A DNA stretch of 64,000 bases from the IMG/VR virus record IMGVR_UViG_3300045135_002615, positions 186,001 through 250,000 of that record. The stretch is one strand, 5' to 3'. Position numbers and translations under genes: made by a program. Below are positions 4,827-61,177 of this stretch, piece after piece (position 1 is the first letter of the stretch; each line of letters begins with the position of its first letter). The notes below the pieces were generated by a model. That model searched no databases. It saw only the letters and a program-made list of their open reading frames with translations, and had not been told where the DNA came from.

Positions 4827-4835
4827 TCTTTTTAT
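4823..4835 (+). promoter_or_regulatory. ATA-N5-TTTAT element
   Basis: ATAGTCTTTTTAT about 38 nt before the ATG at 4873. Confidence 0.65.
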
Positions 4836-4872
4836 CTGAGGTGCATGGGAGATATTCACATAGGTGGTCACC

Positions 4873-6492
4873 ATGAAGATAGCACATCAGATTTCAGACC
4901 TAGAGTTAAGACTCGCGAATCTTGAGAAAGAAGCGGGCATTGGATCATGGGTGGCAGAGTTCTTTGAAGACCGACCAACTTCAGCGGATTTGATACGGGG
5001 TAAGTACTTCTCTAAAGCTAACATCTCAGAGGTAAAGATAGATAACCTCATCTTGGACGGTAAAGACTTCAGGGGTGCTAACTTTCATCGCTCTTCAATG
5101 AAGTCCACCAAGGCAAAGGGAGCGTCTTTTAAGGGGGCGGGTATGTCGTGGGTAGACCTGAGTGGGTCTGTCTTTAATGGGTGTGACTTTACGGGCGTTG
5201 ATTTCAGGTTTGCCAACTTGAACAATGTCACGTTCAATGGGTGTTCCTTGAAAGGTGTGAAGCTCCACTCTTTAAGGGGTGCCGTCGGCGTTAAAATACT
5301 CAACAGCAATATAGAGGGCTTGACCATCATTGGAGGTGTTTTTAAGAGCCCTATACTCCCTCCCCTTAAGGGGGCATCCTTAAAGGGGGCTTCTTTTGAA
5401 GATTGTGCTCTTTCAGATGTAGAGAGTCCTGTCTCCTGTTCGTTTTACAATTGTGAGATAAATGGTCTGACGGGTGATGTCTTGAGTTCTAAGACGAATC
5501 GGTGTAAGGTTAAGGGTCTTAACCTTACCTCAGCCCAGAACACTCTATTTAAGGGTCTGATTGTGGAGGGTAAGGCTAAGATCAATAAGGGTGTTTCTCT
5601 TAGGTTCTCAGGTGTTCAGTTTATGGGTCCTAGTTTGACTCTAAATTTAATTAGTTCAGTGTTGTATGGTGTGACCTTTAGCAAGTGCTTCGTCTCCAAT
5701 ACCAACATCAAGGACTCAAAAGGAAAGATCGTTATCAGGAGTTGCGAGGGACTTGTTGATTTTAGAAACTGCTCTTTCCCGAACTCTCGGATCGAGAAGT
5801 GTAAAATATCAATGGGTGTCACTGACTTGGACTTGAGTGGTTCTCAGATTGTTAATAATGATCTGAGGTTCACAGGGGCTTCTGATTTAGATGTGACGGG
5901 TGCTGACCTTTCAGGCTCAGAGATTAGCGGGCTCATATACTCCGCAGAGATGAACCCCTCAGATTTTGATCAGGCTCTCATGTCTTTACGAGGTATTCTT
6001 GATGACCCAGGTACACTTAAGGGGTACATGGGTCTAGTCAAAACGATGCACCAAACAAAGGCGATCAAAGCAGAAGTCATTGAGAGAATGGAACGTCATT
6101 ATGACAAAAAGTTCACATCTCTCCGCCCTGAAAAGGAAGAGAAGCTCTTTGTGTTCATCTCTTATCTCAAGTATATAGACTCAGAGCTAAGCCTGATAAG
6201 AGAACTTAGTGGACCCCAACCCCATATTGAGAGCATTGAAAAAATGAATGACCTCCTTGAAGAGAGTACTTCAAACTCTCACAAGAAAGTAGACATTCTT
6301 TTAGGTATCTATCAAGACTATAGTGTACAAGAGCTCTCAGACCTCCTCACTGAAAGAGGGATGAGAAATAGATTACCCTCTGAAGGGCGATCTCTTGACC
6401 TCATATTCCTTAGAGTTGCTATGTTAGCTCTTAATGTTAATGAAAGAGAGCTCATCAAATATCTCAAGGAAGTCCGACCCCTATTTAAGTGA
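4873..6492 (+). CDS. Pentapeptide-repeat protein with N-terminal coiled-coil tag
   Basis: DFRGANF/SFKGA/DLSGS repeats; leader QISDLELRLANLEKEA. Confidence 0.8.
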   Translation: MKIAHQISDLELRLANLEKEAGIGSWVAEFFEDRPTSADLIRGKYFSKANISEVKIDNLILDGKDFRGANFHRSSMKSTKAKGASFKGAGMSWVDLSGSVFNGCDFTGVDFRFANLNNVTFNGCSLKGVKLHSLRGAVGVKILNSNIEGLTIIGGVFKSPILPPLKGASLKGASFEDCALSDVESPVSCSFYNCEINGLTGDVLSSKTNRCKVKGLNLTSAQNTLFKGLIVEGKAKINKGVSLRFSGVQFMGPSLTLNLISSVLYGVTFSKCFVSNTNIKDSKGKIVIRSCEGLVDFRNCSFPNSRIEKCKISMGVTDLDLSGSQIVNNDLRFTGASDLDVTGADLSGSEISGLIYSAEMNPSDFDQALMSLRGILDDPGTLKGYMGLVKTMHQTKAIKAEVIERMERHYDKKFTSLRPEKEEKLFVFISYLKYIDSELSLIRELSGPQPHIESIEKMNDLLEESTSNSHKKVDILLGIYQDYSVQELSDLLTERGMRNRLPSEGRSLDLIFLRVAMLALNVNERELIKYLKEVRPLFK

Positions 6493-6507
6493 GTCGGTAA
6501 AACTAAC

Positions 6508-6534
6508 GGGTGGGGTTGATAGTCAACCCCACCC
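6508..6534 (+). terminator. GC-rich hairpin after the pentapeptide gene
   Basis: GGGTGGGGTTGA-TAG-TCAACCCCACCC. Confidence 0.5.
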
Positions 6535-6580
6535 TTCTCAACCTAAGATTGCTCGTAAGAGCATACATGTCGAGAGTAAG

Positions 6581-9031
6581 ATGAACCAAGACGATTTTAA
6601 GTTTTCGGATCACGCCCTTTCCCTATTGTCTTCCTACTACATGGGTCAAGACGAACAAGACCCAACTGAGGCATTCCGTAGGGCGGCGTATTCTTTCACC
6701 CCTAATAAAGAGCTGGCAGAGAGGCTCTATGAGTATGTATGTAAGGGATGGTTTATGTTCTCCTCTCCTGTCCTCTCTAATGCAGGTCGTTCGGGACTAC
6801 CCATCTCTTGCTTTCTTAGCTATGTGGAGGACTCTATCACAGGTCTCATCTCACATACTGAGGAGCTGAGGTGGATGAGTGTTATGGGTGGCGGTGTAGG
6901 TGGTCACTGGGACGGTGTTCGCTCTGTATCAAACAAGTCACCTGGTCCAATCCCCTTCATCAAGACCGTTGATGCTGATATGGTTGCCTATCGTCAGGGT
7001 TTAACTCGTAAAGGATCTTATGCCGCGTACCTTGATGTTTCACACCCTGATCTTGTTGAGTTCTTAAATCTCCGCCTCCCCACAGGTGGTGACACCAACC
7101 GAAAAGCATTCAACATCAACAATGCACTCAACATCACAGATGCCTTCATGGAAGCTGTCCTTAAAGGAAAGCCATGGGACCTCATTGACCCTAATGATGG
7201 TGAAGTGAGAGACACCCTTGATGCCCGTGAACTATGGCAACGTATCCTTGAGGTTCGCTTCCGTACAGGTGAGCCCTACCTCAACTTCATTGATGAGGCG
7301 AATAGACACCTACCTCAACCCCTTAAGGACAAGGGGCTCAAGATCCATGGGTCTAATCTTTGTGTGAGAGGAGACACTCAAATCTTGACCGATAAGGGCT
7401 ACTACCCTATCCAATCACTCGCAGGTAAGCGTGTTAAAGTTTGGAACGGAAAGACATGGTCAACTTCCTTGGTGGCTAAGACAGGTGAAAATGAGAACCT
7501 ATTGAAGATCCGTCTTTCAAATGGGTCAGAACTCTACACCACCCCTTACCATAAGTTCTACACTGTAGAGGGTGTGGAGGTTCAAGCACAAAATCTTGAG
7601 AAGGGCTTAGCCCTCAAGCAGTTCAGCCTCCCTGTAGTGGCAGGTGAAGGCTCATGGGAGAACCCCTATAGCTTGGGGTTCTACCTCTATGATGCCACAG
7701 CCCCCGTTAATCTTGATCTTAAGACCCGTGTCTCATGGTTGAGTGGTTTCATTGACGCTAGAGGCTCAGTTGAGAAGCCCTTTACTCCCTTTATTCAGAT
7801 CAACCACTCTAACTATGACTTCATGCGTCAAGTGGCTCTTATGCTCAATACAATGGGCGTGGCCCCGATCTTAGAACAGAAGCCCACCCATACTGAAATC
7901 AAGATCAACCCCGTAGATGTACAACGACTAAAGGCTCTTGGGTTAGAGACACAGCGTCTTGTTGTCCGTTCAACTCACGTTGAAGGTTCTCACAAAGCTC
8001 AAGTTGAAGTCATGTCTGTTGAGCCATGTGGTGTGGCTGACACTTACTGCTTCAATGAACCCCAAAGACATATGGGCATCTTGAATGGTATCCTAACAGG
8101 CAACTGCAACGAGATCCATCTCCCTACCAGCCCTGAGAGATCCGCTGTCTGTTGTTTGAGCTCACTCAATCTAGAGCACTTTGACGAGTGGTGTGACACC
8201 ACCATCGTTGAGGACTTGATTGAGTTCCTCGATGATGTCCTCCAATACTTCATTGACAATGCACCCCATCAGCTCAGCAAGGCTATCTTCTCAGCCAAGT
8301 CAGAGCGGTCACTAGGTTTAGGGACTATGGGCTTCCACGCATATCTACAGCGAAAAGGTCTCCCCTTTGAGTCCGCCCTTGCTGTTGGTGTTAATCGCCG
8401 TATCTTCTCCACGATCAAGGAGAAGGCAGTACAAGCTACAGAGAGGCTCGCTAAGGAGAAGGGTGAATACCTTGATGGTATTGGCTCAGGTCGTAGGAAC
8501 TCACACTTGTTAGCTATAGCACCGAACGCCAACTCCGCTATCATCCTCGACACCTCCCCTAGTATCGAGCCTTGGAAGTCAAACGCCTTCACTCACCGCA
8601 CTCGTGCGGGCTCCTTCTTGCAGTTCAACAAGTACCTTGAAGAACTCCTTAAGACCAAAGAGGGTATCGACTTTGAGGAGGTCAAGCAGAGCATCATCTT
8701 GAGCCAAGGTTCTGTGCAACACCTTGAGTGCTTGACCGATTGGGAGAAGCAAATCTTTAAGACTGCATTTGAGCTTGATCAGATGTGGGTCGTTGAGCAC
8801 GCTTCTGTGAGACAAGAGTGGATCTGTCAAGGTCAGTCGGTCAACCTCTTCTTCCCTTCAGGCTCGGACATCAATTATGTCAGTAATGTTCACCTCTCAG
8901 CATGGAAGAAGAAGCTCAAGGGGCTTTACTATCTCCGCACCAATACTGGTGTAGTGGCGGATAAGGTCAGCGAGAAGGTGGAAAGACAAGCACTTAAAGA
9001 CTTTGATGAGTGCTTGAGCTGTCAAGGTTAA
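6581..9031 (+). CDS. nrdA: Ribonucleotide reductase class I alpha subunit, intein-containing
   Basis: SSPVLSN, PISCF, RKGSYAAYL, SNL/CNEI, AIAPNA, YY, C-terminal CLSC; start at MNQDDF preferred over the overlapping start at 6434. Confidence 0.95.
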   Translation: MNQDDFKFSDHALSLLSSYYMGQDEQDPTEAFRRAAYSFTPNKELAERLYEYVCKGWFMFSSPVLSNAGRSGLPISCFLSYVEDSITGLISHTEELRWMSVMGGGVGGHWDGVRSVSNKSPGPIPFIKTVDADMVAYRQGLTRKGSYAAYLDVSHPDLVEFLNLRLPTGGDTNRKAFNINNALNITDAFMEAVLKGKPWDLIDPNDGEVRDTLDARELWQRILEVRFRTGEPYLNFIDEANRHLPQPLKDKGLKIHGSNLCVRGDTQILTDKGYYPIQSLAGKRVKVWNGKTWSTSLVAKTGENENLLKIRLSNGSELYTTPYHKFYTVEGVEVQAQNLEKGLALKQFSLPVVAGEGSWENPYSLGFYLYDATAPVNLDLKTRVSWLSGFIDARGSVEKPFTPFIQINHSNYDFMRQVALMLNTMGVAPILEQKPTHTEIKINPVDVQRLKALGLETQRLVVRSTHVEGSHKAQVEVMSVEPCGVADTYCFNEPQRHMGILNGILTGNCNEIHLPTSPERSAVCCLSSLNLEHFDEWCDTTIVEDLIEFLDDVLQYFIDNAPHQLSKAIFSAKSERSLGLGTMGFHAYLQRKGLPFESALAVGVNRRIFSTIKEKAVQATERLAKEKGEYLDGIGSGRRNSHLLAIAPNANSAIILDTSPSIEPWKSNAFTHRTRAGSFLQFNKYLEELLKTKEGIDFEEVKQSIILSQGSVQHLECLTDWEKQIFKTAFELDQMWVVEHASVRQEWICQGQSVNLFFPSGSDINYVSNVHLSAWKKKLKGLYYLRTNTGVVADKVSEKVERQALKDFDECLSCQG
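7361..8104 (+). mobile_element. Intein in NrdA (248 aa) with partly deleted LAGLIDADG endonuclease
   Basis: NL|CVRGDT...ILTGN|CNEI; block B TTPYHKF; one intact motif LSGFIDARG. Confidence 0.92.
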
Positions 9032-9076: not shown

Positions 9077-9553
9077 ATGCTAAACAGAGTCACTAATGCT
9101 TACTTGTCTAAGCTCTCGTCATATAAAGAGAACACCTACAGGGTGTCTACTCTAACCATCTTCGACACCCTCCCTAAGAAAAGAGTGAAGGTGAAGAGAA
9201 TGGATATGATTAAAGAGTCCGCTATCGGCGGGGATTGTTACAAAGCAAATGGTGACTACTTCATGGATAATGCTTACCATGAGCCTAACCTCCGCTTAGT
9301 GCATGGCGAGGTGAGGGGTCAAGGAGAGCTACAAGGCATCACCTATGGTCATTGTTGGTGTGAGCTAAACGGAGATGTCTTAGATTTCTCCAATGGGCGG
9401 AACATCAAGATAGACAAGAGGGTCTATTATGCACTCGGAGGTATCGACCATATAGATAACCTTCATGTGTACGACCTCAACACATTCAATCAAAACATCT
9501 CAAAACATGGTCATTGGGGTCCATGGGACCTCAAGACTAAATCAGGACTATAA
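9077..9553 (+). CDS. Papain/transglutaminase-fold-like protein
   Basis: GDCY...GHCWCE...VLD suggests a Cys-His-Asp triad. Confidence 0.5.
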   Translation: MLNRVTNAYLSKLSSYKENTYRVSTLTIFDTLPKKRVKVKRMDMIKESAIGGDCYKANGDYFMDNAYHEPNLRLVHGEVRGQGELQGITYGHCWCELNGDVLDFSNGRNIKIDKRVYYALGGIDHIDNLHVYDLNTFNQNISKHGHWGPWDLKTKSGL

Positions 9554-9565
9554 AGGAGGTCAACT

Positions 9566-10093
9566 ATGAGAGATAAGATTAGTCACCTAGAAGCCCGTAT
9601 TGCACTTCTTGAGCGTTCTTCTTCGGATCGCTTCCGTCCGAGTGATCCTGAGCCCGACCCTTCATGGCAACACACGTCCCCCAATGATATTGATGTACGC
9701 GGTCCCGCTGACCGCCCAAATGCGACACCTTCTGAACTGTGGGAGGAGATGAAAAACTACATGGTGGAGAATGGACTTGGTCGTGTTAAGGCTACGCCAG
9801 GCACTGTTTCCTTCTACCTCTTTTACTACCTAGACCCCGAACAATACCTAGACCCCGACCAAGCTAACTATTACCGAGGTCGCGAGCTTGCTGAAATCTT
9901 CGCCAGGATTGTCAGGAACAAAAGAGGATGGACTGACAGAGGATGGACTGCGAGGCAGCTTGGTGGGGACAAGGTACGGGTCACCAAAACCAAAGGTAGA
10001 GCTATTTACAGGGGTGAGCGTATCCATGTAGAAGGAGAAGCCATTTTCAGGGTCACTATCAAAAATGATTGGATCACCATCCACAAGCCTTAA
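9566..10093 (+). CDS. Hypothetical protein with coiled-coil tag
   Basis: MRDKISHLEARIALLER; AAGGAGG RBS. Confidence 0.8.
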   Translation: MRDKISHLEARIALLERSSSDRFRPSDPEPDPSWQHTSPNDIDVRGPADRPNATPSELWEEMKNYMVENGLGRVKATPGTVSFYLFYYLDPEQYLDPDQANYYRGRELAEIFARIVRNKRGWTDRGWTARQLGGDKVRVTKTKGRAIYRGERIHVEGEAIFRVTIKNDWITIHKP

Positions 10094-10103
10094 GGAGACA
10101 TTT

Positions 10104-10670
10104 ATGAGAGATAAGATTAGTCAACTAGAAGCCCGTATTGCACGTCTTGAGCGAGAGTCTAAGGAGAAGTATCCTTGGGACGATTGCATCAAAGATCAGA
10201 TGGAGCAGTACGGGGACAAAGAGACTGCTGAGAAGGTCTGTGGCAAGATCAAGGCACAGTCTCAGGGTAAGAAGGCATCAGATGCGGATCGAATGAATGT
10301 GTTCGTAGGCTCTCTCAAACAGCAGCTACCTCGTGACATCAAGATTGAGGTCTCTGTAGTTGACCGTGAGTCTCATGGCACTACTTATTCTGTTAGTATC
10401 TACCCTTTCAATCCGAATATCTATGATCGCATGGACCTTTTGCGTTTCAAGGGTGATCCAAGACGCTCCGCACCTGCCACCCCTGCGGCTAAGGCTTCCA
10501 ATCGTAAAGCTGCCAACGCTATTCGTAAGGCATTGAAGTTGTTCAATGATGACATTAGACTGCTCAATGACTATAGCTATGAAAAGCCAACTTTGAGGAG
10601 ACCAAGAGTTGGTCCAGCGTACTACGATGGTGTTGCACACGAGATTATCGTCCTCGCTTACAATGTCTAA
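10104..10670 (+). CDS. Hypothetical protein with coiled-coil tag
   Basis: MRDKISQLEARIARLER; small WDDCI...KVCG domain ending at KKAS; AAGGAG RBS. Confidence 0.8.
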   Translation: MRDKISQLEARIARLERESKEKYPWDDCIKDQMEQYGDKETAEKVCGKIKAQSQGKKASDADRMNVFVGSLKQQLPRDIKIEVSVVDRESHGTTYSVSIYPFNPNIYDRMDLLRFKGDPRRSAPATPAAKASNRKAANAIRKALKLFNDDIRLLNDYSYEKPTLRRPRVGPAYYDGVAHEIIVLAYNV

Positions 10671-10773: not shown

Positions 10774-11502
10774 ATGAGCGGTTTTGCAGATTTTAATCTC
10801 GGTTCATCGAACCAACTTCTTAACGCAGGCAAGACAAAGTGGAAGCCTGAGAACGGCAAGTATCGTGTGTCCTTCGTTGCCCTCCCCGGCATCGAAGAGG
10901 GCAAGCCTCAGTTTGAGGATGCTCAAGGCAACCCCACCAACCCTAACTTCAAGGGCGGTAGCACGATCTACATTGACAAGGTCGGTACAGTCCTCGACAA
11001 GGGTCCTGAGTTCCGTGCTCTCAGCAAGGATGGCAAGGCTCCCTCAACAAAGGTTGTGACCACCTTCGTGTTTTGGCCTACCGATTCAAATGGTGCTCTT
11101 GACAAGGATCGCTTTGCAAAGGGCGACTTTCAGGTACTCAACTACCCCATGAGCCTCGACAAGTACCGTCAGCTTGAGGGTATCAATGTTGAGTTCCCCC
11201 TCAGCAACCATGACCTCAACATCACGGTTGTTGACAAGCAGTTCCACAAGATGACGTTCTCCCCCTCACGCGACAGCCTCTTGAAGATTGTCTCTGAGAA
11301 GAACGCCTCTCTCTTTGAGAGTGTCATCGCCGCCGCTAAGCCCGTCCTTGACGCTCGTGAGTCAGACCTTGCAAACGCGGGTCACCTTACGATTGATCAG
11401 ATTCGTGAGAAGCTCAGTGGCAACATCGGCTCGCCTGTTGAGAGTAAGTCAAACAGCTTCGGCTCTAGTTTCGATGCTGATGACCTTCTCGATAACCTCT
11501 AA
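10774..11502 (+). CDS. Single-stranded DNA-binding protein (gp32-like)
   Basis: Beta-rich core, HDLNI, acidic tail FDADDLLDNL; strongly biased codons; TATAAT upstream. Confidence 0.6.
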   Translation: MSGFADFNLGSSNQLLNAGKTKWKPENGKYRVSFVALPGIEEGKPQFEDAQGNPTNPNFKGGSTIYIDKVGTVLDKGPEFRALSKDGKAPSTKVVTTFVFWPTDSNGALDKDRFAKGDFQVLNYPMSLDKYRQLEGINVEFPLSNHDLNITVVDKQFHKMTFSPSRDSLLKIVSEKNASLFESVIAAAKPVLDARESDLANAGHLTIDQIREKLSGNIGSPVESKSNSFGSSFDADDLLDNL

Positions 11503-16549: not shown

Positions 16550-17050
16550 ATGTGGAGGAATGGCAAGGGAGATAAAGTGACCCTTACAGATGTTCTCTCA
16601 TTTGTTGAGAAGGCTCATGCAGTAGGGTCACAGGTAGTAGTTGGTACAGATAGTCAGCCTTTCAATCATGGCACTTTCTCTGTGACCGTAATCGCATTCC
16701 TCTCTAGTGATCGCTCCGTGCATGGCAGGTACTTTTACTTAGAACACTCAGAGCTGACTAAACACCACAATCTTTTTGAGAGGATTTATCACGAGGTGAG
16801 CCTCACGATAAACCTACTACATGAGATCAAGCATTTGACCCCTATAGAGGACATAGAAGTCCATATAGACGTGAGCCCTGATAATGGGAAAACAAAGACC
16901 TCACGTTGGTCAAATACCCTTGTTTCGATGGTTAGAGGGTATGGCGTTCGTGAGGTCTGTGTGAAGCCTTCTTCTTGGTGTGCTTCTAAGTTAGCAGATG
17001 CTTACACCAAGAAGAGGAGTATTCGTGTACTGAGGAACAGGGCTCAATAG
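16550..17050 (+). CDS. RNase H-fold YkuK/DUF458-like protein
   Basis: VVGTDSQ, ERIYHEV, IEVHID, KP..W.AS..AD. Confidence 0.8.
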   Translation: MWRNGKGDKVTLTDVLSFVEKAHAVGSQVVVGTDSQPFNHGTFSVTVIAFLSSDRSVHGRYFYLEHSELTKHHNLFERIYHEVSLTINLLHEIKHLTPIEDIEVHIDVSPDNGKTKTSRWSNTLVSMVRGYGVREVCVKPSSWCASKLADAYTKKRSIRVLRNRAQ

Positions 17051-17460
17051 TCGAAGTCTAGGGAGATCTCCAAGAGCTTGATCTCATCCTCTTCGAGAGG
17101 CTCACCGAGTACACTGATCACCATCTCGTAACGGAAGGTCACATCGGGGTCTCCCTCTTCGGGGTAATCTTCACTGTACGCTTTGACTTCCATAGAGTCG
17201 TCATCAGCCCAGTTAACCCAACCAAGATCCTTTAATCTCTCCTTCTTGATAAAGGAGAGTAGGTCTTCAAGGCTCTTGAACTTCTGCTTACGGTACATGG
17301 TGGCATAATCCTGCTCATAGTCACCGCTACCATCAGGGGAGAACCTAGTCTCTACGGAATAGACTGAAACCTCGAACCTATCCTTAGCGGGTTTCCCCCT
17401 AAGAGTCTTTTTTTCAAGGCGGGCAATGCGGCTCTCTAGCTCACTTATCTTGTTGATCAT
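17044..17460 (-). CDS. Acidic hypothetical protein with coiled-coil tag
   Basis: MINKISELESRIARLEKK; motif at 17495-17507. Confidence 0.8.
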   Translation of the reverse strand: MINKISELESRIARLEKKTLRGKPAKDRFEVSVYSVETRFSPDGSGDYEQDYATMYRKQKFKSLEDLLSFIKKERLKDLGWVNWADDDSMEVKAYSEDYPEEGDPDVTFRYEMVISVLGEPLEEDEIKLLEISLDFDY

Positions 17461-23403: not shown

Positions 23404-23811
23404 ATGAAGAAAAAAGCATCAAGTCAGGCAGGGTGGTCTTTACTGACCAGTGGGGTGTCACAAGCGAGGGTGGAAGCACACATTGTGAGGATAGCCCTCA
23501 ATCAGATGCTTGACGCTCTCTCTAACTCTCCACTTAAAGAGGAGTTCTATCGCCTCTGTGGAGACAACCTAGAGGCACTCCCCTTACATCTGAGTAAGAT
23601 GGAGCGTCAGTTAGACAAGACCAACTATGCATTGATCACTATGGGTGGGGATTACTACCGACAGAGGCTGACCCATGAGGATAGAGAGTCAGTGGACATG
23701 GCAGCCAAGTATAATCCGACACCTTCACCCACGCTTACCAAGTCTTCAAGTATAGATGATCTTGAGATGAGGATTGCTTATTTGGAGGATTTGAGGCGTA
23801 AGGCTAAGTGA
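23404..23811 (+). CDS. Putative virion protein with C-terminal coiled-coil tag
   Basis: KKAS start; IDDLEMRIAYLE; GTAGTTCTTTTAT at 23359. Confidence 0.75.
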   Translation: MKKKASSQAGWSLLTSGVSQARVEAHIVRIALNQMLDALSNSPLKEEFYRLCGDNLEALPLHLSKMERQLDKTNYALITMGGDYYRQRLTHEDRESVDMAAKYNPTPSPTLTKSSSIDDLEMRIAYLEDLRRKAK

Positions 23812-27911: not shown

Positions 27912-29354
27912 ATGGCATTCTTAAGATACGCTAAGGCTAATGTAGTGCGACCTGAACTACATGGTCTTGAATGGGATAAGGTCAGGGTCGCTTCGGGAGA
28001 CAAGAAGCTAAACAAGTCTCTCAAGAAGCAAGCTGAGGATATCCTTGGAGAGCCCTTCACACCCGAAAGATTCCTCCTTACTCACTCTACTATTGTTTGC
28101 TCCGTAGACGCAGTCTCTCCTCCCAATACCAAAACAGGTAATGTTGTTGAAGAAGGGGCTAAGGTAAATCGCAAGTATGCCGATTACAGAGTGTCCCCTG
28201 AGACGGATAAGTTTATCAACAACAACCTTGATTGTTGGTCACGGGGGGTCATCAAGAAGTCTTATCAGACTTTCATTGGGGCACATAACTTCGTGGAGCA
28301 CATCCAAGTTGAGGAACTCTCTAAAGGTCGCATTATTGATGCTGTTCTCCGAGATATTGGTGATAGCCTCTATGTGGATATACTTGTAGCCACAGACCGC
28401 AAGCACAAGGACCTCGTTGATCAAATCGTCTCAGGTAAGATGAACTCCATGAGTATGGGTTGTAGCGTCGAGTTTACGATTTGTACTAAATGCGGGCACG
28501 TTGCCGCTGATGAGACTGAGATGTGTCCCCATGTTAAGTATGAGAAGGGCAACACCTTCTTTGACGAACAGGGTAATAAGCATAGGGTTGCGGAGCTCTG
28601 TGGGCATGAAGATGTAGGAGGTACCGCAGGTGTGACCTTCATTGAAGCCTCATGGGTTGCCACGCCCGCATTCCCTGGTGCAGTAGCCCGCAACACCATT
28701 GAAATCCCATCAGATGAACCTGCTAAGGTTGCAAGCCTTAATGAAGTCCCTGAGAAGTGGATTGCCAAAGCCGCCTCTCTTGTTGACTCTCCTTGGTATG
28801 ACCCTAATGGAGTGCTTAGTAAGGTCGCAGGTCCCTTTGACGACATGGGTGGTGATGACGATAGTGACGGAGATAAAAAAGAAGAAAAGCCCGACCCCTC
28901 ACTACTCTCTCAACTTGAAGGTGTCTATGAAAAGGCGGTTATTGATCGTTTCCGTCAAAAGCTTGAGAATGAGATGAAGAAGGAGAAGGCTCAGGAAGCC
29001 ATGAACCCTCCTATCAGTAAGTCTACTGTCGAGCAAAATGACACCGTCATCAAAGAAGGTCATGTGAACGCAGCTCAGTATCTTAACGCTCTAGAGATCG
29101 CTGTTAAGACCGCCTCTTCAACTGAGGAAGCTGTGTTGAACCTTACTTTGGTCAACAATCACTATGGGGTTAATATCCCTCCTCATGTGTACAAGCTGGC
29201 TTCTAAGCTCGGCTCAACCTCAAACCATAAAGATGTAGATAGTTTCCTTAAGAAGGCTTCTACTCTACATGGTAAAATCTTGTCTAGTTCTGAAGCTCGC
29301 ATCCTAGTTAGGCTAGCTAAGATACTCTCAATCAACTCTTTCGGGCAGAGGTAA
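27912..29354 (+). CDS. Prohead (capsid maturation) protease
   Basis: FVEH, SMSMGC, Zn insert CTKC..C.H, FIEASWVATPA (HK97/assemblin-type pattern); position before scaffold and capsid. Confidence 0.8.
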   Translation: MAFLRYAKANVVRPELHGLEWDKVRVASGDKKLNKSLKKQAEDILGEPFTPERFLLTHSTIVCSVDAVSPPNTKTGNVVEEGAKVNRKYADYRVSPETDKFINNNLDCWSRGVIKKSYQTFIGAHNFVEHIQVEELSKGRIIDAVLRDIGDSLYVDILVATDRKHKDLVDQIVSGKMNSMSMGCSVEFTICTKCGHVAADETEMCPHVKYEKGNTFFDEQGNKHRVAELCGHEDVGGTAGVTFIEASWVATPAFPGAVARNTIEIPSDEPAKVASLNEVPEKWIAKAASLVDSPWYDPNGVLSKVAGPFDDMGGDDDSDGDKKEEKPDPSLLSQLEGVYEKAVIDRFRQKLENEMKKEKAQEAMNPPISKSTVEQNDTVIKEGHVNAAQYLNALEIAVKTASSTEEAVLNLTLVNNHYGVNIPPHVYKLASKLGSTSNHKDVDSFLKKASTLHGKILSSSEARILVRLAKILSINSFGQR

Positions 29355-29389
29355 AGTCCTGCCCCGTCATGTTAGAAAGGAATTGCCTT

Positions 29390-31036
29390 ATGTCTAGGTA
29401 TGACCGTTCAAATAAGTCTCGCAGGGCTATGGCTACACGTCGCCGTCGCTTTGCAAACTCTTCTATCCCTGGCTCAGACAACCTAGGTTGGGAGCACTTC
29501 GGACACCCCGCTGCTGGCGAGCAACCTGCTGTCGATGAGTATGGTTTTGATAGCGAGTTCGGTGAGGGCGTTCGCAAGGGTCCTTACAGCTCTGGTGCCG
29601 CTCCTGCCTCTTATGGTTGGTCTCCTGAGCACCCCGCTGCTTCAGACATGGTTCGTGAGGATTACGCCATGACTGAGACCCTCCGTAACGAGAACCTCAA
29701 GAAGGCTATGGAGCGTAAGGCAGCTAAGTGCATTGAGATTGCTGAGTCACGCCTCGGTAAATATGCGAGTGCCTCTGAGATTGAGGATCTTGCTCTTCGT
29801 TTCATGGATCTCCCCAACAGCGTTGTGAATGGTCGTGTCGCTTCTCTTCGTAATGCTGATAACGCTGTTCAGATGAACACAGGCTATGAGGGTCTTGACT
29901 TCACAGGTCCTGGTAACGCAGGTTCTGATCTTGAGGCAGACGAGTGGATGTCTGACGAGTTCGAGGCTGACATGGACATGATGGCTGATGAGCTTGAGGC
30001 AGACGAGTGGATGTCTGATGAGTTCGAGGCTGACATGGACATGATGGCTGATGAGTTCGAGGCTGATGAGCTTGAGGCTGACATGGACATGATGGCTGAG
30101 GACATTGAGGCACATGATCTCTTTGACGAGTATGACCTCGATGGTGATGACCTCATCTCCCGTGATGAGTGGGGCGGTAGCATGGGGGCGTTCGATGTAA
30201 TGGATCTTGATGAGGATGACTTCCTCTCTCGTGATGAGGTTGCTATGGGTCTAGGTGACTCTTTCGGCAACCCTTCACAGGCGGAGATGCTCGCTGAGGA
30301 GATTTCTAATCTTAAGCAAGCTAATGCCCGCCTCGCCCGTCAGGTTCGTAAGCTTGCCGATAACGCAGTTCAGCAAGCTACGGACTACACCGTAGAGGAC
30401 TTCAGCGATCCTATCGACACTACACCTGAGTCTGAGGAGGGTGAGGGCACTCCTACTCAGCGTCTTGCCCGTCTTGAGCGTCTCGCATCTGTACTCGCAG
30501 ATTACATGGGAGAGCTTGAGGCTGAGGAGGAGATGTCTGACATGAATGATCCTCACTACGGCTACTCAAAGGCAGCAGGTGATGAGCCCGAAGAGGAAGA
30601 GGGTGACGATGAGGATCTTGAGGAAGATGCCAAGAATGTTGCAGAGACCGCAGAAGATCCTAAGTCTGAGAAGAAGGCTTCTGAGGATCTTGAGGAAGAG
30701 GAGGCTGAGGAAGAGGAGACTGAGTCTGAGAAGAAGGCTTCTGACGACAACATGGGTCTCGATGTAGAGGACGGTGACATGGAGATTGATCCTCGTCTTG
30801 CTTCTATCTTCACCGCTTCTGACGAGGAAGAGGCTGAGGAAGAGGAGGCTGAGGAAGAGGAGACTGAGGGAGAGGAGCCTAAGTCTGAGAAGAAGGCTTC
30901 TTACAAGCCCGCTATCAATACTCGTCAGGCAAGTGTTAAGACCCTCGGTAACATCAGCCGTGAGGCTTCTGCTTCTTCTGATGAGCTCAGCAAGCTTTGG
31001 GCTTCAGCTCCTGACGTGAGCAAGTTCTTCGGTTAA
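29390..31036 (+). CDS. Capsid scaffolding protein with EF-hand pair
   Basis: Highly acidic, coiled coils, between protease and capsid genes; many [KR]xAS sites. Confidence 0.75.
   Translation: MSRYDRSNKSRRAMATRRRRFANSSIPGSDNLGWEHFGHPAAGEQPAVDEYGFDSEFGEGVRKGPYSSGAAPASYGWSPEHPAASDMVREDYAMTETLRNENLKKAMERKAAKCIEIAESRLGKYASASEIEDLALRFMDLPNSVVNGRVASLRNADNAVQMNTGYEGLDFTGPGNAGSDLEADEWMSDEFEADMDMMADELEADEWMSDEFEADMDMMADEFEADELEADMDMMAEDIEAHDLFDEYDLDGDDLISRDEWGGSMGAFDVMDLDEDDFLSRDEVAMGLGDSFGNPSQAEMLAEEISNLKQANARLARQVRKLADNAVQQATDYTVEDFSDPIDTTPESEEGEGTPTQRLARLERLASVLADYMGELEAEEEMSDMNDPHYGYSKAAGDEPEEEEGDDEDLEEDAKNVAETAEDPKSEKKASEDLEEEEAEEEETESEKKASDDNMGLDVEDGDMEIDPRLASIFTASDEEEAEEEEAEEEETEGEEPKSEKKASYKPAINTRQASVKTLGNISREASASSDELSKLWASAPDVSKFFG
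29933..30100 (+). repeat. 63-bp tandem repeats (EADEWMSDEFEADMDMMADEL)
   Basis: Units start at 29933 and 29996, plus a partial third. Confidence 0.9.
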
Positions 31037-31053: not shown

Positions 31054-31066
31054 ATAGTCCTTTTAT
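31054..31066 (+). promoter_or_regulatory. ATA-N5-TTTAT element for the decoration/capsid operon
   Basis: TCAATAGTCCTTTTAT, identical to the copy at 27354. Confidence 0.7.
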
Positions 31067-31795: not shown

Positions 31796-32674
31796 ATGAG
31801 CAATACCGTAGATAACAGCGTTAAGAACAAGATCATCAGCGACTTCATCAAGACCCCTCAGGGTCGTGCTAAGCTCGCTGCTTCAATGACTCAGCCCCTC
31901 CGCCTCCGCCGTGACTATACATCAGTCGGCCGTAAGACCTTCCAGGTCGAGCAGCTTCCTGATGGAGCACTCCCCATCTACGACAAGGATCCCGATGTGA
32001 CCGCATTTGTCGTTGGTGAGGAAGGCGAGAACATCCTCGCTATCACCAAGCCACGCCGTGTGATCTTCCCTCTCTTCGAGATCGCATCTAACCCTGAGAT
32101 TCCCCTCACACAGATCAAGGAGCGTAGATTCGACCTCATCGAGCGTGCTCAGGATCTCGCTAGGGCTCAGATTCAGGCGGCTGAGGACGAGCGTGTGTTC
32201 GCTATACTCGATGCCGTTGCAGCTAACGGCTTCGACAGCGTTGCAGGTCAGACTAACGCTGACATCCCTGTCATCGCTCCTCTCAATGGTGCTGTCCTCG
32301 CTGACGCATTCGCACAGATCGAGCGTCACGACCTTCGCGTTGCCCGCGTATTCATGAACGCTCGTGACTACGCTGACATCCGTAAGTTCGGCCGTGATAT
32401 TCTCGACATCGAGAGCCAGGCTGCTCTCCTCAAGACTGGTCTTCAGGCTACTCTTTGGGGTGCTCAGATCATCACATCACGTCTCGTGCCTGTCGGTACG
32501 GTGTACGTCTGCTGTGAGCCTGAGATGTTCGGACGTATCCCCGTTCGTACTGAGCTCACCGTCCTCTCTGCTGACGATCCTAAGGCTCGTACAATTGGCT
32601 TCAGCGTCTTTGAGAATTTGGGCATTGGTGCCTACAACCCTCGCGGTCTAGTCCGCCTCACTGTTACTCGCTAA
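31796..32674 (+). CDS. Major capsid protein (HK97 fold)
   Basis: 292 aa; strongest codon bias; module position; GRAKLAASM..PLR...DY..VGRK, WGAQI, C-terminal NPRG; followed by a terminator. Confidence 0.88.
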   Translation: MSNTVDNSVKNKIISDFIKTPQGRAKLAASMTQPLRLRRDYTSVGRKTFQVEQLPDGALPIYDKDPDVTAFVVGEEGENILAITKPRRVIFPLFEIASNPEIPLTQIKERRFDLIERAQDLARAQIQAAEDERVFAILDAVAANGFDSVAGQTNADIPVIAPLNGAVLADAFAQIERHDLRVARVFMNARDYADIRKFGRDILDIESQAALLKTGLQATLWGAQIITSRLVPVGTVYVCCEPEMFGRIPVRTELTVLSADDPKARTIGFSVFENLGIGAYNPRGLVRLTVTR

Positions 32675-32961: not shown

Positions 32962-33216
32962 ATGTCTTTAGATAAAAGAAAACTAGAAGAAGTCTTTGGA
33001 GAAGCTGAGATGGCATTTTGGGATGCTGTCGCATCGTCTTTTCCTGAAATCAAAAGTGGAGATCTCTCTCCATCTGACTCTGCCAAACTTGAAAAAGCCA
33101 TGAAAGAGGCAATCCAATCTTGGTATGTGGGCAATCAGCCTGCGGGTGAATCAACCAGCCAGATTGTCCGTAATCTTGAGCGTAGGGTTGCCCGACTCGA
33201 AAAGTCATCAAGGTAA
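32962..33216 (+). CDS. Small protein with C-terminal coiled-coil tag
   Basis: AGGAGG RBS; IVRNLERRVARLEK. Confidence 0.75.
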   Translation: MSLDKRKLEEVFGEAEMAFWDAVASSFPEIKSGDLSPSDSAKLEKAMKEAIQSWYVGNQPAGESTSQIVRNLERRVARLEKSSR

Positions 33217-34299: not shown

Positions 34300-34815
34300 A
34301 TGAGACACTTAACAGCAAGTCAGAAGATCGCTCACCTTGAGCATCGCCTCGCTCGTCTTGAAAGAAGAGCTACGCATTGGACTGATGTCTACCATCCGAG
34401 TGAGATGGTAGACGGCTACGTTGATGATATGGGCTACGAGAAGTACCCACCCAGCTATAGCCAAGGACCGGTATGTGACTCTATAGCAAGAGAGATGAGT
34501 CGCCGCCTGAAAAGGAAGGGTTATAATATCCAACATATGCCTGATTGGGTTGGGTATAGGATTCACCTCCCTTTGAATGGGATCACTTATGAGATGATAA
34601 ACTCAGATACTGATCCAAGTCTACCTCTCTGTAAAGAGTTAGTTCTCCAGGTAATGAAGGACGCAGGTCTTAAGGGTCATGTGTACTACAGGAGAGGGTC
34701 TCACTACTACAGGAAAGAGCTTGCGGGGGGTCGCTGTCTCCTTAGTATTAGTTGCTCACAAGATGAGGGTCTGAGCTTTGATGTAGACAGGGTGATAACC
34801 CGACGTAGGAGATAA
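34300..34815 (+). CDS. Hypothetical protein with coiled-coil tag
   Basis: GGAG RBS; MRHLTASQKIAHLEHRLARLERRA. Confidence 0.8.
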   Translation: MRHLTASQKIAHLEHRLARLERRATHWTDVYHPSEMVDGYVDDMGYEKYPPSYSQGPVCDSIAREMSRRLKRKGYNIQHMPDWVGYRIHLPLNGITYEMINSDTDPSLPLCKELVLQVMKDAGLKGHVYYRRGSHYYRKELAGGRCLLSISCSQDEGLSFDVDRVITRRRR

Positions 34816-34868: not shown

Positions 34869-35243
34869 ATGTCCATGAGACACTTAACAGCTAGTCAAAA
34901 AATCGCTCAACTTGAATCCCGTATCGCCCGTCTAGAGAAGCAAGCCTCTTTGAGAAGAGGTCTCGACAGGGAGGAGGAAACCGTCTTAGATGAAGTAATC
35001 CACCACTACAGACTCAGGCCACGAGACTATGAAGATGTCGAAATTAGTATTGAGGATCAGGTAGGGCGTGGGGAAGATAGGATCGTGCTCTATGAGGTGT
35101 CTCTTTTCAAAGAAGACGGGGATAGCTTTACTTGCTATGTCCTTTATGACGCTTACGAAGAATTGGTGGAAGGGTTTTACGATTACCAAGATGATTATGA
35201 AGCCCAAAGAGCCTTTGACTCACTAGTAGAGCGACACGCATAA
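34869..35243 (+). CDS. Acidic hypothetical protein with coiled-coil tag
   Basis: MRHLTASQKIAQLESRIARLEKQAS; motif at 34823-34835. Confidence 0.8.
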   Translation: MSMRHLTASQKIAQLESRIARLEKQASLRRGLDREEETVLDEVIHHYRLRPRDYEDVEISIEDQVGRGEDRIVLYEVSLFKEDGDSFTCYVLYDAYEELVEGFYDYQDDYEAQRAFDSLVERHA

Positions 35244-44997: not shown

Positions 44998-45642
44998 TTA
45001 GGAAGCTAAGAGCTCTTTTACAATTTGGTCGCAGGTAAGAGATCCTCTCTTCATGTCTACAAGGCTAATCTCAACCATGCGACCGTCCAAGAAAACTCTC
45101 AATCTAGGTCGGAATGGATGCTCAAGTACCATCTCACCACCTACTGCCACACCATGTCTTTCTAAGCGGCTCTTTATTTTATTAAACTGACTACTTGCTC
45201 TCTCCATAGCTATTTGAGCTTCAAAGTGTAATGTAAACAGTTTTTGTGTTCTACTTAAAGTCAAAGACCCTGAATCTAATGTGTGGGTGAGTACCATGCC
45301 CTTCACTCCGAAATCGACATGGACATCACCTCCTTCATTGGGTTGGCACACCTTACCTGCCAAAAGTATCGTGTGTCCCTTGTACAGCACTTTAGCGGAC
45401 AGGTGAAAGTTCTTGTCGTTCACTTTCACCTTTGCTGAATACACATCTCTTAGTGATTCCAATGTGGCTTCCACGTCACTTGCTATATCATCCCCTTTAA
45501 GAAAAAGGGGTATGTTTACAATCCCTCCCCTGTAGACTTTAAGTTCACCTTCAACATCTTTAATGTATAAGGCTGCCTTCTTCTCAAGGTGGCTGATCCT
45601 TTTTTCTAAATCATAGATTCGTTCCACAGCTGTCTTTCTCAT
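44998..45642 (-). CDS. Hypothetical protein with coiled-coil tag
   Basis: MRKTAVERIYDLEKRISHLEKKAA; AGGAG RBS; motif variant at 45680-45692. Confidence 0.78.
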   Translation of the reverse strand: MRKTAVERIYDLEKRISHLEKKAALYIKDVEGELKVYRGGIVNIPLFLKGDDIASDVEATLESLRDVYSAKVKVNDKNFHLSAKVLYKGHTILLAGKVCQPNEGGDVHVDFGVKGMVLTHTLDSGSLTLSRTQKLFTLHFEAQIAMERASSQFNKIKSRLERHGVAVGGEMVLEHPFRPRLRVFLDGRMVEISLVDMKRGSLTCDQIVKELLAS

Positions 45643-49768: not shown

Positions 49769-49799
49769 CGAGGATCTCCATGTGAAAGGACTATGAAAC

Positions 49800-59982: not shown

Positions 59983-60638
59983 ACATGTTTAAGAGTGCTT
60001 CAAAGACCCCTCGTACCATGCGTAGAATTTATGAGGAGGTAGACTCTCCTATGGGTGGTCCAGCTAATGAGAATGCGGACTACTTTGGTGAGATCACTGT
60101 CAGTGATAACCACATCTACCTCTATCGAGGGATCACACCTAAGTCTGTTATGGAGATGGGGATTGCCATCAAAACCATTAGTCAACAGATCGTCAACATG
60201 GTGACTGACCTTGACCTACCTTCAGCTCCACCTATCCATCTCCATATCAACTCAGGAGGTGGGTGTGCTTTCAGTGGACTTGCGGGTGCAAGTCATATTT
60301 TAGGTTCAGACATCCCTGTGTTCACTTATGTTGAGGGTTCTGCTGCATCAGCGGCGACCATTATGTCTTGTGTTGGAGCAAAGCGTTTCATCACCGAGCA
60401 TAGCTTTATGTTGATCCATCAGATCAGCACTGGTGTGTGGGGTACATATGAGAACCTGAAGGACGAGAAGGAGTCTATGGATGCACTCATGGCTCAACTT
60501 GAGGGGATCTACTTGAAGAACACGAAACTCAAGAAGAAGGACCTGAAAGAGCTGTTGAAGCGTGACCTATGGCTCAATGCAGATCAATGTTTAGAGAAGG
60601 GTCTGGTAGACGAGGTCATCAAGTACGAGAGGGTTTAA
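59979..60638 (+). CDS. clpP: ClpP-like protease
   Basis: INSGGG, AASAAT, MLIHQ, RDLWLNA...GLVD. Confidence 0.85.
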   Translation: MNMFKSASKTPRTMRRIYEEVDSPMGGPANENADYFGEITVSDNHIYLYRGITPKSVMEMGIAIKTISQQIVNMVTDLDLPSAPPIHLHINSGGGCAFSGLAGASHILGSDIPVFTYVEGSAASAATIMSCVGAKRFITEHSFMLIHQISTGVWGTYENLKDEKESMDALMAQLEGIYLKNTKLKKKDLKELLKRDLWLNADQCLEKGLVDEVIKYERV

Positions 60639-61177
60639 AGAGGACACGCCTCATGTGAGGGGTCTTTCTCACCTGCGTAATAGACGGTGACCACATTAAC
60701 CATAGACCCTTCAACTTCAAATACCACAATCAAGTCACCGAGTGCTTCTGCTCTCCACTTGAGTCTTTGTCCCATAAAGATACGCTCTTTGATCTGCTCG
60801 ATGACCCTTGATCTCTTGTTGTAGTTCTGTCGAAGGTATCTACCAAACAGGTTGAAGTAAGTCTTTAGGTCACCTATAGTCACACCTCTCTGATCCATAC
60901 GGAACTGAGCGTGTGTGGTGATCTTCATCCTCTTGAATGTCTTATCCCCAACTCGTTCAAACTCTAGGTCATAGATATTATGAGTGTACGAGTCAGGGAT
61001 GGCTTGTCCTTCTTGAACGATTCTCACAAGTTGCCTCTTTAGTTTAGGGTTTCGGATATTATCCTCGATCCTCCTCTTAGTGTGGCATACTCCGCCTGGG
61101 TATCCGAGTGGAGGGTTCAAGTCCGAGATACGCTCAAGTCGAGCGACCCTCATGATTAGTCGGTCTATCTTGTTCAT
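60635..61177 (-). CDS. Tagged protein with DUF4258/RelE-like putative RNase domain
   Basis: MNKIDRLIMRVARLER; TTHAQFRMDQRG...VVF...VVTVY. Confidence 0.6.
   Translation of the reverse strand: MNKIDRLIMRVARLERISDLNPPLGYPGGVCHTKRRIEDNIRNPKLKRQLVRIVQEGQAIPDSYTHNIYDLEFERVGDKTFKRMKITTHAQFRMDQRGVTIGDLKTYFNLFGRYLRQNYNKRSRVIEQIKERIFMGQRLKWRAEALGDLIVVFEVEGSMVNVVTVYYAGEKDPSHEACPL

What the first reader, a model, noticed from the sequence alone, without database searches (positions are those of the whole stretch)
9566..10155. The tag is a recently shuffled DNA module
The first 50 nt of the genes at 9566 and 10104 match at 48/50 positions by my count (ATGAGAGATAAGATTAGTCA[C/A]CTAGAAGCCCGTATTGCAC[T/G]TCTTGAGCG), then the sequences diverge completely. 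The pair at 34300 and 34875 likewise share MRHLTASQKIAxLExRxARLE with unrelated bodies. This suggests new payloads are recruited by recombination behind the leader.
Basis: seen in the sequence. Interest (0 to 1): 0.75.

Follow-up and report, generated by a model that had tools for sequence, protein, structure and literature searches.

The report
Recombining address tag on phage genes
Two neighbouring genes of a 297-kb marine jumbo phage start with the same 50-base leader. It is one of about 23 copies of a short coiled-coil "address tag" in the genome, and close relatives show that a gene cassette was removed, exchanged or copied over exactly at this leader.

Summary
Window 9566-9615 and 10104-10153 match at 48/50 bases, with no similarity upstream or downstream and none expected by chance.

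The leader encodes the start of a roughly 23-residue N-terminal tag, consensus MRR[ST]AS[EQ]xIxxLExR[IV]ARLE[KR][QE][AS]. It is a basic helix of about two and a half heptads. The tag heads 23 otherwise mostly unrelated small proteins in this phage G-like genome and 7-33 in four large relatives.

Most leader copies differ at many synonymous sites, so the peptide is old and selected as a protein. That includes the pair at 34300/34875, which a relative keeps as a pair.

The 9566/10104 pair is different. Among close relatives the site has three states:
- cassette present with two near-identical leaders (window);
- a cassette only 45% identical, with two different leaders (SRR21201124);
- no cassette (L016, L017).

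L016 reads as the cassette's leader fused to the downstream gene's body, joined at the last bases of the leader.

The function is inferred: most likely a capsid or scaffold targeting propeptide like the T4 CTS. That is unproven.

The parts
9566..9615 (+). Leader copy 1: first 50 nt of the cassette gene, encoding MRDKISHLEARIALLE(R)
   Evidence: 48/50 identical to 10104-10153. It carries the same allele (ATTGCAC) as copy 2, unlike the cassette leader in relative L174.
9566..10093 (+). Cassette gene, 175 aa: tag, then a Pro/Ser/Asp-rich linker, then a small body with two internal short duplications
   Evidence: Open frame with genome-typical codon use (0.28 against a mean of 0.27). Absent from L016 and L017. 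A 45%-identical allele lies at the same site in L173. No Pfam or PHROG hit.
9566..10103 (+). 538-nt indel unit (leader, body and ribosome site), bounded by the two leader copies
   Evidence: Contigs of two other metagenomes skip 9552 to 10092. With this unit removed, the window is 95% identical to L016 over 1.9 kb.
10104..10153 (+). Leader copy 2: first 50 nt of the downstream gene
   Evidence: It is only 82% identical to the leader of the L016 orthologue, while the next 121 nt are 99% identical.
10104..10670 (+). Downstream gene, 188 aa: tag, a cysteine-pair mini-domain (about aa 20-57, roughly nt 10158-10270), then the body
   Evidence: Orthologues P0001 (94%), P0002 (78%) and P0034. The mini-domain occurs in many unrelated metagenome proteins.
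9077..9553 (+). Conserved left flank gene (158 aa)
   Evidence: Present directly upstream of the site in L016, L017 and L174. 92-94% nt identity.
10774..11502 (+). Conserved right flank gene (242 aa)
   Evidence: 96% nt identity to L016 and L017.
34300..34815 (+). Tagged gene (171 aa), first of the second pair
   Evidence: Orthologue P0028 (89%) carries the same leader type. Distant homologues carry MRKTASE or MRRTASE leaders, and one (P0031) has none.
34875..35243 (+). Tagged gene (122 aa), second of the second pair
   Evidence: Orthologue P0026 (72%) has the leader. In L172 the leader is frameshifted by one A.
4873..6492 (+). Tagged pentapeptide-repeat protein (539 aa)
   Evidence: Tag found. 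Pfam PF00805, E 6e-21.
17044..17460 (-). Tagged gene (138 aa), leader MINKISELESRIARLEK
23404..23811 (+). Gene (135 aa) with the tag at its C-terminus (nt 23749-23793)
   Evidence: Homologues in G001 and G002 have a different C-terminus without the tag.
32962..33216 (+). Gene (84 aa) just downstream of the capsid gene, with a full tag at its C-terminus (nt 33163-33207)
44998..45642 (-). Tagged gene (214 aa), leader MRKTAVERIYDLEKRISHLEKK
60635..61177 (-). Gene (180 aa) with a degenerate tag and a weak DUF4258 match
   Evidence: The G001 orthologue keeps a tag. In G002 the payload is fused to another N-terminal region.
27912..29354 (+). Head maturation protease (480 aa)
   Evidence: phrog_18299, E 6e-15. 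44% identical to the annotated protease of Tunturi_5.
29369..31036 (+). Acidic scaffold-like protein (555 aa) with tag-like helices (QRLARLERLA and ANARLARQVRKLA)
   Evidence: Both blocks are conserved in 8 tag-bearing relatives and are absent from the LR745208 homologue, whose genome has no tags.
31796..32674 (+). Major capsid protein (292 aa)
   Evidence: 38% identical to Bacillus phage G gp27 and 47% to Tunturi_5. 573 relatives in IMG/VR.

Best explanation
The 50-nt match is two copies of the coding leader for a short N-terminal address tag. The tag is carried by about 23 unrelated small proteins of this phage G-like jumbo phage.

Two processes act on it. First, selection on the peptide keeps a basic amphipathic helix of about 23 residues (a/d positions I/L/V, e/g positions E/R/K) at a fixed distance from the initiator Met, followed by small residues. 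I infer that it docks cargo onto the scaffolding core of the procapsid and is probably clipped off by the head protease. This would work like the T4 capsid targeting sequence, so the payloads would be packaged and ejected with the DNA.

Second, because the leader is a 50-75-nt repeat present many times per genome, homologous recombination and gene conversion act on it. At 9566-10155 this produced a leader-flanked 538-nt cassette that is present, replaced by a very divergent allele, or precisely excised in close relatives. In the window genome the two leaders have been homogenised.

Shown here: the repeat, the tag family, the indel and chimera structure, and selection at peptide level. Inferred: the targeting function, the cleavage, and the direction of the event.
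For: Genetic part:
- 48/50 identity confined to the leader.
- 0 synonymous changes in 16 codons. Other same-type leader pairs in this genome average about 6.3 synonymous codon differences per 22 codons. By my arithmetic that gives P of about 0.003-0.02.
- The cassette is absent in L016 and L017.
- The leader is the most divergent 50-nt window against L016 (82%), and the following 121 nt are 99% identical.
- L016 equals L174 (ribosome site and leader) up to CTTGAG, then equals L173 (body).
- The cassette alleles are 45% identical between flanks that are about 97% identical.
- The same pattern recurs in relatives: G002 155773/156717 share 59/60 nt after the ATG and then fall to random, and two G001 loci 332 kb apart do likewise.

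Tag as a peptide:
- 23 copies, with an HMM score gap (members score 17.6-30 bits and one degenerate N-terminal copy, at window 60635-61177, 8.0; the next match scores 4.5).
- 7-33 copies in four relatives.
- In the consensus of 76 tags the Met is fixed at -11 and conservation stops after +12.
- Two full copies sit at C-termini.
- Payloads occur with and without the tag.
- The leader RNAs fold no better than shuffles (z +0.5 to +2.1).

Targeting inference:
- Tagged genes cluster 1-7 kb downstream of the capsid gene in relatives and around the head module here.
- The scaffold carries tag-like helices only in tag-bearing genomes.
- A TTTTAT box stands about 40 nt upstream of 10/23 tagged genes, 46/317 genes overall and 1.8% of random sites. 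A matching box precedes the decoration-capsid operon.
- Payload types (pentapeptide-repeat proteins, a toxin-like domain, ORFans) resemble known ejected proteins.
- The T4 precedent is described in PMC7411985 and PMC3012670.
Against: - There is no direct evidence that any tagged protein is in the virion. No cultured relative carries the tag: phage G, Tunturi_5 and LR745208 have none.
- LR745208 shares 88% capsid protein identity yet lacks tags, so the capsid protein itself is not the receptor.
- The tag does not fit the T4 (L/I-x-E) or SPN3US (A-x-E) cleavage motifs at its end, and the protease family is unresolved.
- The extended promoter-like motif is not significantly enriched among tagged genes (3/23, p = 0.10).
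- The direction of the event (insertion or excision) cannot be fixed with four relatives.
- That L174 and L173 adjoin rests on a 14-nt overlap of two contigs from one sample.
Confidence: 0.55

Rival explanations
1. Plain tandem gene duplication followed by divergence of the bodies, with the N-terminus kept by selection.
For: The two genes are adjacent and on the same strand. True tandem paralogues with tags exist elsewhere in the genome (147725/148676/149700).
Against: The bodies show no similarity (z = -0.27), while the leader is 96% identical with no synonymous change. Uniform divergence cannot give both. The downstream gene has orthologues without the upstream one. The upstream gene has its own allele series.
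Confidence: 0.03
2. The nucleotide identity reflects a DNA- or RNA-level element inside the leader, such as a translational operator, a regulatory RNA structure or a protein binding site, rather than recombination.
For: The match starts at the ATG, where translation signals lie. Leaders are unusually unstructured (z up to +2.1), as good initiation regions are.
Against: Other leaders of the same peptide type differ at 4-10 synonymous codons. Orthologous leaders drift like their genes. Full tags occur at C-termini. There is no Rfam hit. The L016 chimera shows a recombination junction regardless.
Confidence: 0.07
3. The tag is real and recombines as described, but its job is not capsid targeting. 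It might be a generic oligomerisation zipper, a handle for a phage chaperone or protease (timed degradation), or an anchor to another virion or cell structure.
For: The core is a canonical zipper heptad: the string RIARLE occurs in a v-Jun paper and RVARLE in papers on synthetic peptide networks. That these strings belong to the Jun leucine zipper and to designed coiled-coil peptides is from my own knowledge. g/e charges allow self-pairing. The window encodes a GroEL-like protein. The tags have an RRxS-like start. The capsid protein is nearly unchanged in a tag-less relative.
Against: Two and a half heptads are short for stable self-assembly. The fixed N-terminal position and the abrupt end at small residues look like a propeptide. 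Tagged genes cluster beside the head genes. Tag-like helices occur in scaffolds of tag-bearing genomes only.
Confidence: 0.3
4. Assembly artefact: the repeat, or the chimera in the relatives, was made by an assembler collapsing or joining repeats.
For: Short-read contigs of SRR21201124 break close to the leader.
Against: An independent Logan contig of 30.5 kb spans the whole stretch with 0 differences. The longest exact run shared by the two copies is 20 nt, below typical k. The cassette-less form appears in two different samples and two assemblers (L016 Logan, L017 JGI). Leader A and leader B share no run long enough to mis-join at the observed junction.
Confidence: 0.02

Closest known systems
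Capsid targeting sequence (CTS) of phage T4 internal proteins IPI-III and Alt
   Same: A short N-terminal peptide shared by otherwise unrelated, fast-evolving small proteins. In T4 it binds the scaffolding core and is removed by the prohead protease, and the cargo is ejected with the DNA (PMC7411985, PMC3012670). Here too a head protease and an acidic scaffold are encoded beside many of the tagged genes.
   Different: There is no sequence similarity. The tag is about 23 residues and coiled-coil in character, against about 10. It lacks the T4 L/I-x-E end. There are about 23 carriers per genome against 4. Some copies are C-terminal. Packaging and cleavage are not shown here.
PeSL-mediated modular shuffling in T4-type phages (Arbiol et al. 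2010, PMC2839356)
   Same: Short repeats dispersed among nonessential ORFan genes act as recombination patches. They cause insertion, deletion and replacement of single-gene cassettes between close relatives.
   Different: PeSLs are intergenic promoter-terminator cassettes. Here the repeat lies inside the coding sequence and encodes the protein's address tag, so recombination stays in frame and hands the tag to whatever follows. Mini-circles were not tested.
N-terminal propeptides of ejection and inner-body proteins in giant phages SPN3US and phiKZ
   Same: Jumbo phages with many head-internal proteins processed by the prohead protease (PMC7411985, PMC5694885).
   Different: Those propeptides are long, not a shared short motif, and end in A-x-E. 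They come from a different phage lineage (not phage G-like).
Encapsulin cargo-loading peptides
   Same: A short terminal peptide directs diverse cargo into an HK97-fold shell and works as a portable module (from my own knowledge).
   Different: These peptides are mostly C-terminal, have a different motif, and bind the shell protein directly. Here the shell protein is almost unchanged in a tag-less relative.

Membership tests
T4-type capsid targeting sequence | A short N-terminal peptide conserved among otherwise unrelated proteins of one phage | tested here: met
   23 carriers. Most bodies are mutually unrelated. Consensus from 76 tags.
T4-type capsid targeting sequence | The peptide ends at a prohead-protease site (T4: L/I-x-E, cut after E) | tested here: not met
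   The tag ends ...A-R-L-E-[KR]-[QE]-[AS]-[GSA]. P3 relative to E is R/H/Q, not L/I. A different site, for example after the small residues, is possible but untested.
T4-type capsid targeting sequence | Sequence homology to the T4 CTS | tested here: not met
   No Pfam, PHROG or NCBIfam match covers the tag. By eye it is unlike the T4 CTS, which I recall from memory.
T4-type capsid targeting sequence | Directs the protein into the prohead core and is removed on maturation | not testable with these tools
   Needs virion proteomics or co-assembly assays.
PeSL-type recombination cassettes | Indel or replacement junctions between close relatives coincide with a dispersed short repeat | tested here: met
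   Junctions lie at the leader.
PeSL-type recombination cassettes | The repeat is an intergenic promoter plus stem-loop terminator | tested here: not met
   The repeat is coding and starts at the ATG. Its RNA is less folded than shuffles.
PeSL-type recombination cassettes | Circular excision products | not tested
   Only assembled contigs were available. Raw-read junction searches were not possible.
Coiled-coil (leucine-zipper type) heptad peptide | Hydrophobic a/d positions with charged e/g positions over consecutive heptads | tested here: met
   I at -3 (90%), L at 0 (97%), I/V at 4 (87%), L at 7 (100%). E at 1 and 8. R at 3, and R at 6 in 68%.
Phage G-like jumbo phages | Capsid protein and head-module synteny shared with Bacillus phage G | tested here: met
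   38% capsid protein identity. The same decoration-then-capsid gene order as in phage G, and the fuller head-module order as in Tunturi_5.

The most novel reading that the evidence does not exclude
A widespread group of aquatic phage G-like jumbo phages runs an in-frame cassette system. A coding leader serves both as the protein's loading address for the capsid interior and as the DNA homology patch that lets any payload be swapped, deleted or captured behind it. Each genome then carries a rapidly turning-over arsenal of 20-30 co-injected effectors, and the tag could be used as a portable cargo-loading peptide for very large capsids.
Probability: 0.3. Interest if true: 0.8.

Novelty: new variant of a known kind. 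Interest (0 to 1): 0.68.

Why it matters
If the tag is a loading address, it marks the whole set of proteins that these uncultured jumbo phages deliver into their hosts. There are 573 capsid-gene relatives in IMG/VR. Almost all the payloads are ORFans and good candidates for counter-defence functions. The locus at 9566-10155 also captures how such arsenals turn over: a coding repeat keeps exchanges in frame, so a new body acquires the address at the moment it is joined. This links two T4 themes (CTS-tagged internal proteins and repeat-mediated modular shuffling) in one element, in an unrelated lineage. It also gives simple sequence rules for finding tagged cargo in metagenomes. Gene callers often start these genes downstream of the leader, so the tags are easily missed.

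Tried and rejected
- Complex prediction, scaffold residues 296-400 with the 122-aa tagged protein: no verdict (score 0.01). It counts neither for nor against binding.
- AlphaFold2 of the 175-aa cassette protein without an alignment: mean pLDDT 38.7, unusable. A structural comparison of the two bodies could therefore not be made.
- Pfam, PHROGs and NCBIfam on the payloads and head proteins gave almost nothing.
- PDB sequence search with the protease gave nothing useful.
- The ESM Atlas gave no credible look-alike for either payload tried.
- blastn of the locus against GenBank phages found no match.
- An exact search of IMG/VR for the window's leader allele found no other contig.
- Scans of IMG/VR and JGI metagenomes with the 242-aa flank gene found only distant relatives (55% identity or less), useless for the indel.
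- The large relatives G001-G005 are too mosaic at this site.
- The region downstream of the capsid gene has no homologue of the second pair in 80 related loci.
- Full-text searches found no description of the tag or of the cysteine mini-domain. One literature search was unfocused.
- Considered and dropped: the tag as a signal peptide (it is charged, not hydrophobic), and another genetic code (none is needed; all frames are open under table 11).

Full report
**Context.** The window is bases 186001-250000 of a 296,642-bp IMG/VR virus record (47% GC, CheckV completeness 95%). Its major capsid protein (31796-32674) is 38% identical to Bacillus phage G gp27, 47% to Tunturiibacter phage Tunturi_5 and 88% to the uncultured huge phage LR745208. 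The gene order is protease, acidic scaffold-like protein, decoration protein, capsid protein. The decoration-then-capsid order matches phage G and the fuller order matches Tunturi_5. IMG/VR holds 573 contigs with this capsid protein, and the 80 best loci kept are at least 90% identical, so this is a common aquatic jumbo-phage group. The runs that hold the locus are seawater and estuary metagenomes.

**The observation.** Bases 9566-9615 and 10104-10153 agree at 48 of 50 positions. Nothing matches before the ATG or after base 50, and shuffles give no such match. Within the window this is repeat family D7. Both copies follow an AGGAG-type ribosome site. The proteins behind them (175 and 188 aa) are unrelated by BLASTP, by Smith-Waterman against shuffles (z = -0.27) and at DNA level. 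The 175-aa frame has normal codon usage for this genome over its whole length. The pair at 34300/34875 shares a 22-residue leader with unrelated bodies (z = 0.16), but only 51/66 bases.

**The tag family.** A regular expression and then an HMM of the core find 23 carriers in the genome. Members score 17.6-30 bits, apart from one degenerate N-terminal copy (window 60635-61177) at 8.0; the next match scores 4.5. Twenty-one carry the tag at the extreme N-terminus, one of them 22 residues in. Two carry a full copy at the extreme C-terminus (23404-23811 and 32962-33216). Four large relatives carry 33, 28, 15 and 7 copies (30 and 27 on my own rescan of two of them).

Phage G, Tunturi_5 and LR745208 have none. 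The same degenerate DNA pattern gives 20 hits in the window's genome and 0 when read backwards.

Seventy-six N-terminal tags from three genomes give the consensus M-R-R-[ST]-A-S-[EQ]-x-I-x-x-L-E-x-R-[IV]-A-R-L-E-[KR]-[QE]-[AS]-[GSA]. The Met lies 11 residues before the first LE in 60% of them, and conservation collapses after position +12. The a/d positions are I/L/V and the flanking positions E/R/K, as in a canonical zipper heptad. The strings RIARLE and RVARLE turn up in a v-Jun paper and in papers on synthetic peptide networks; that they lie in the Jun zipper and in designed coiled-coil peptides is from my own knowledge.

**The payloads.** Apart from three small paralogue groups they are mutually unrelated. 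Two are pentapeptide-repeat proteins, one has a weak DUF4258 match, and the rest are ORFans. Thirteen of the 23 have no homologue in two complete relatives.

**Peptide or DNA?** Seven MRHLTASQ-type leaders differ pairwise at 0-10 (mean 6.3) synonymous codons out of 22. Orthologous leaders in relative L171 have drifted about 20% along with their genes. Homologues of the 34300 payload at 35-46% identity carry leaders of another subtype, and one has none. C-terminal copies keep the peptide. The homologues of one of them, in G001 and G002, end differently, without the tag. Leader RNAs fold worse than shuffles, and Rfam finds nothing there. The tag is therefore an old, portable protein module under purifying selection, and the second pair is an old arrangement.

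**The first pair is the exception.** It has no synonymous change in 16 codons. By my arithmetic, P is about 0.003 for 0 of 13 informative codons at a background rate of 0.36.

Four close relatives define the site.
- In L016 (Logan, ERR14949490) and L017 (JGI), the 158-aa left flank gene is followed directly by the 188-aa gene. The 175-aa gene is missing, and contigs of two further runs skip 9552 to 10092.
- With the 538-nt unit removed, the window is 95% identical to L016 over 1.9 kb. The leader is the worst 50-nt window (82%) and the next 121 nt are 99% identical.
- Sample SRR21201124 gives contig L174. It ends with the left flank gene, a leader of another allele (leader A) and the first codons of a cassette.
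- The same sample gives contig L173. It begins 14 nt before L174 ends and continues through a cassette protein 45% identical to the window's. Leader B and a roughly 97% identical orthologue of the 188-aa gene follow.

The six-row alignment shows that L016 is identical to L174 from the ribosome site through the last CTTGAG of the leader, and identical to L173 from the next base on. That is the product expected from recombination between leader A and leader B. It is equally the substrate into which 'body plus ribosome site plus leader B' was inserted.

In the window both leaders are of type B. One has therefore been copied over the other, or the cassette arrived with its own pair. The cassette body differs far more than its flanks (45% aa against about 97% nt), which points to allele replacement or very fast evolution between fixed junctions.

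**Generality.** In relative G002, nearby tagged genes share 59/60 and 58/60 bases after the ATG and then fall to random identity. In G001, two loci 332 kb apart do the same. Leaders are more alike within a genome than between genomes (41 against 36 of 72 bases). In the tandem paralogue trio of this genome, leaders carry fewer synonymous differences than bodies (4/27 against 51/131, p = 0.025). Leader homogenisation is therefore recurrent.

**Function (inferred).**
- In relatives, tagged genes form arrays 1-7 kb downstream of the capsid gene. In the window four of them flank the head module.
- The scaffold-like protein of all eight tag-bearing relatives examined has two conserved tag-like helices. 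The LR745208 homologue lacks both, and that genome lacks tags.
- A TTTTAT box about 40 nt upstream marks 10 of 23 tagged genes and 46 of 317 genes. A matching box precedes the decoration-capsid operon. A stricter motif is not significantly enriched.
- The fixed N-terminal position and the abrupt end at small residues suit a cleaved propeptide.

Together with the T4 precedent (PMC7411985, PMC3012670), this makes a scaffold-directed loading tag the best guess, at roughly 40%. An oligomerisation or turnover handle remains a serious rival.

**Comparison and novelty.** In function the nearest analogue is the T4 CTS. In genome dynamics it is PeSL-mediated modular shuffling (PMC2839356). The element is a member of neither family: the sequence, the cleavage motif and its coding rather than intergenic nature all differ. 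I found no description of the tag in the searchable literature. I rate it a new variant of a known kind, and of good interest because the address and the recombination site are the same element.

Noticed in passing
window 10158-10270: A mini-domain of about 37 residues with two cysteines (KYPWDxCIxDQMxxYGDxETAxKVCGxIK) follows the tag in the 188-aa gene. The same module sits at N-terminal, internal or C-terminal positions of many unrelated metagenome proteins, including the C-terminus of PF14550 (XkdF-type) prohead proteases. There is only one copy in this genome. It has no Pfam entry and I found no description of it in the literature.
   Followed up: partly
window 54664-54726 and 20186-20213, compared with 29926-30143: The scaffold's acidic repeat (DMMADEWMSD...) recurs at the C-terminal end of the 536-aa protein (53246-54856). 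Its DLFDEYDLD (EF-hand-like) stretch recurs in the 370-aa protein (19559-20671). These may be further shared docking modules.
   Followed up: no
genome-wide, e.g. window 31060-31072, 4830-4842, 53200-53215: A promoter-like box (AGTC)TTTTAT(A) lies about 35-45 nt upstream of 46 of 317 starts, against 1.8% of random sites. It also lies 122 nt upstream of the decoration-capsid operon, so it may be the late promoter.
   Followed up: partly
L172:426-470 against window 34875-34920: In one relative the leader of the 122-aa gene has lost one A from an A6 run. That puts the tag out of frame, and the gene was called from a downstream TTG. It could be a real on/off slip or a homopolymer error.
   Followed up: no
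window 9566 and 34300: Automatic gene calls start downstream of the leader: the 175-aa gene is on record as 114 aa starting at M62 (P0024), and the 171-aa gene starts at residue 36 in the ESM Atlas. Tags are therefore under-annotated in databases.
   Followed up: partly
window 9830-9870 and 9925-9960: The cassette gene contains two short in-frame tandem duplications (YLDPEQ/YLDPDQ and RGWTD/RGWTA). Both are absent from the allele in L173, a sign of fast local change.
   Followed up: partly
window 33375-33707 (-) and 33896-34177 (-), with repeats 33705-33781 / 34175-34242: Two small minus-strand genes with hydrophobic N-termini and near-duplicate upstream regions lie between the capsid gene and the second pair. 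Together with the 84-aa C-tagged gene, they are absent from relative L171, where the 171-aa gene follows the capsid gene directly.
   Followed up: no
window 47276-47347 and 47716-47788: Two tRNA genes on the + strand.
   Followed up: no
window 48386-49801 (-): A GroEL-like chaperonin gene (phrog_5725, E 4e-24).
   Followed up: no
window 6434-9031: The 865-aa ribonucleotide-reductase-like ORF seems to carry an intein-like insert (a Cys-led block after NLCV and a ...GNC junction). This was read from the translation only and was not tested.
   Followed up: no
window 61230-62930 and 62997 to beyond 64000: The 566-aa protein has pentapeptide-like tandem repeats: 17 copies in register at 62235-62658, with PHROG hits shared with the tagged pentapeptide protein. 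It is followed by a 3139-aa ORF that runs past the window end.
   Followed up: no
genome 147725-150665 (outside the window); G002 151814-156717: A tagged family of about 320 aa is present as 3 tandem copies here, as 7 copies in G002 and not at all in G001. Many tags in this and other families continue with a second short motif (A-G-L/F-x-D/E-I/F-F).
   Followed up: partly
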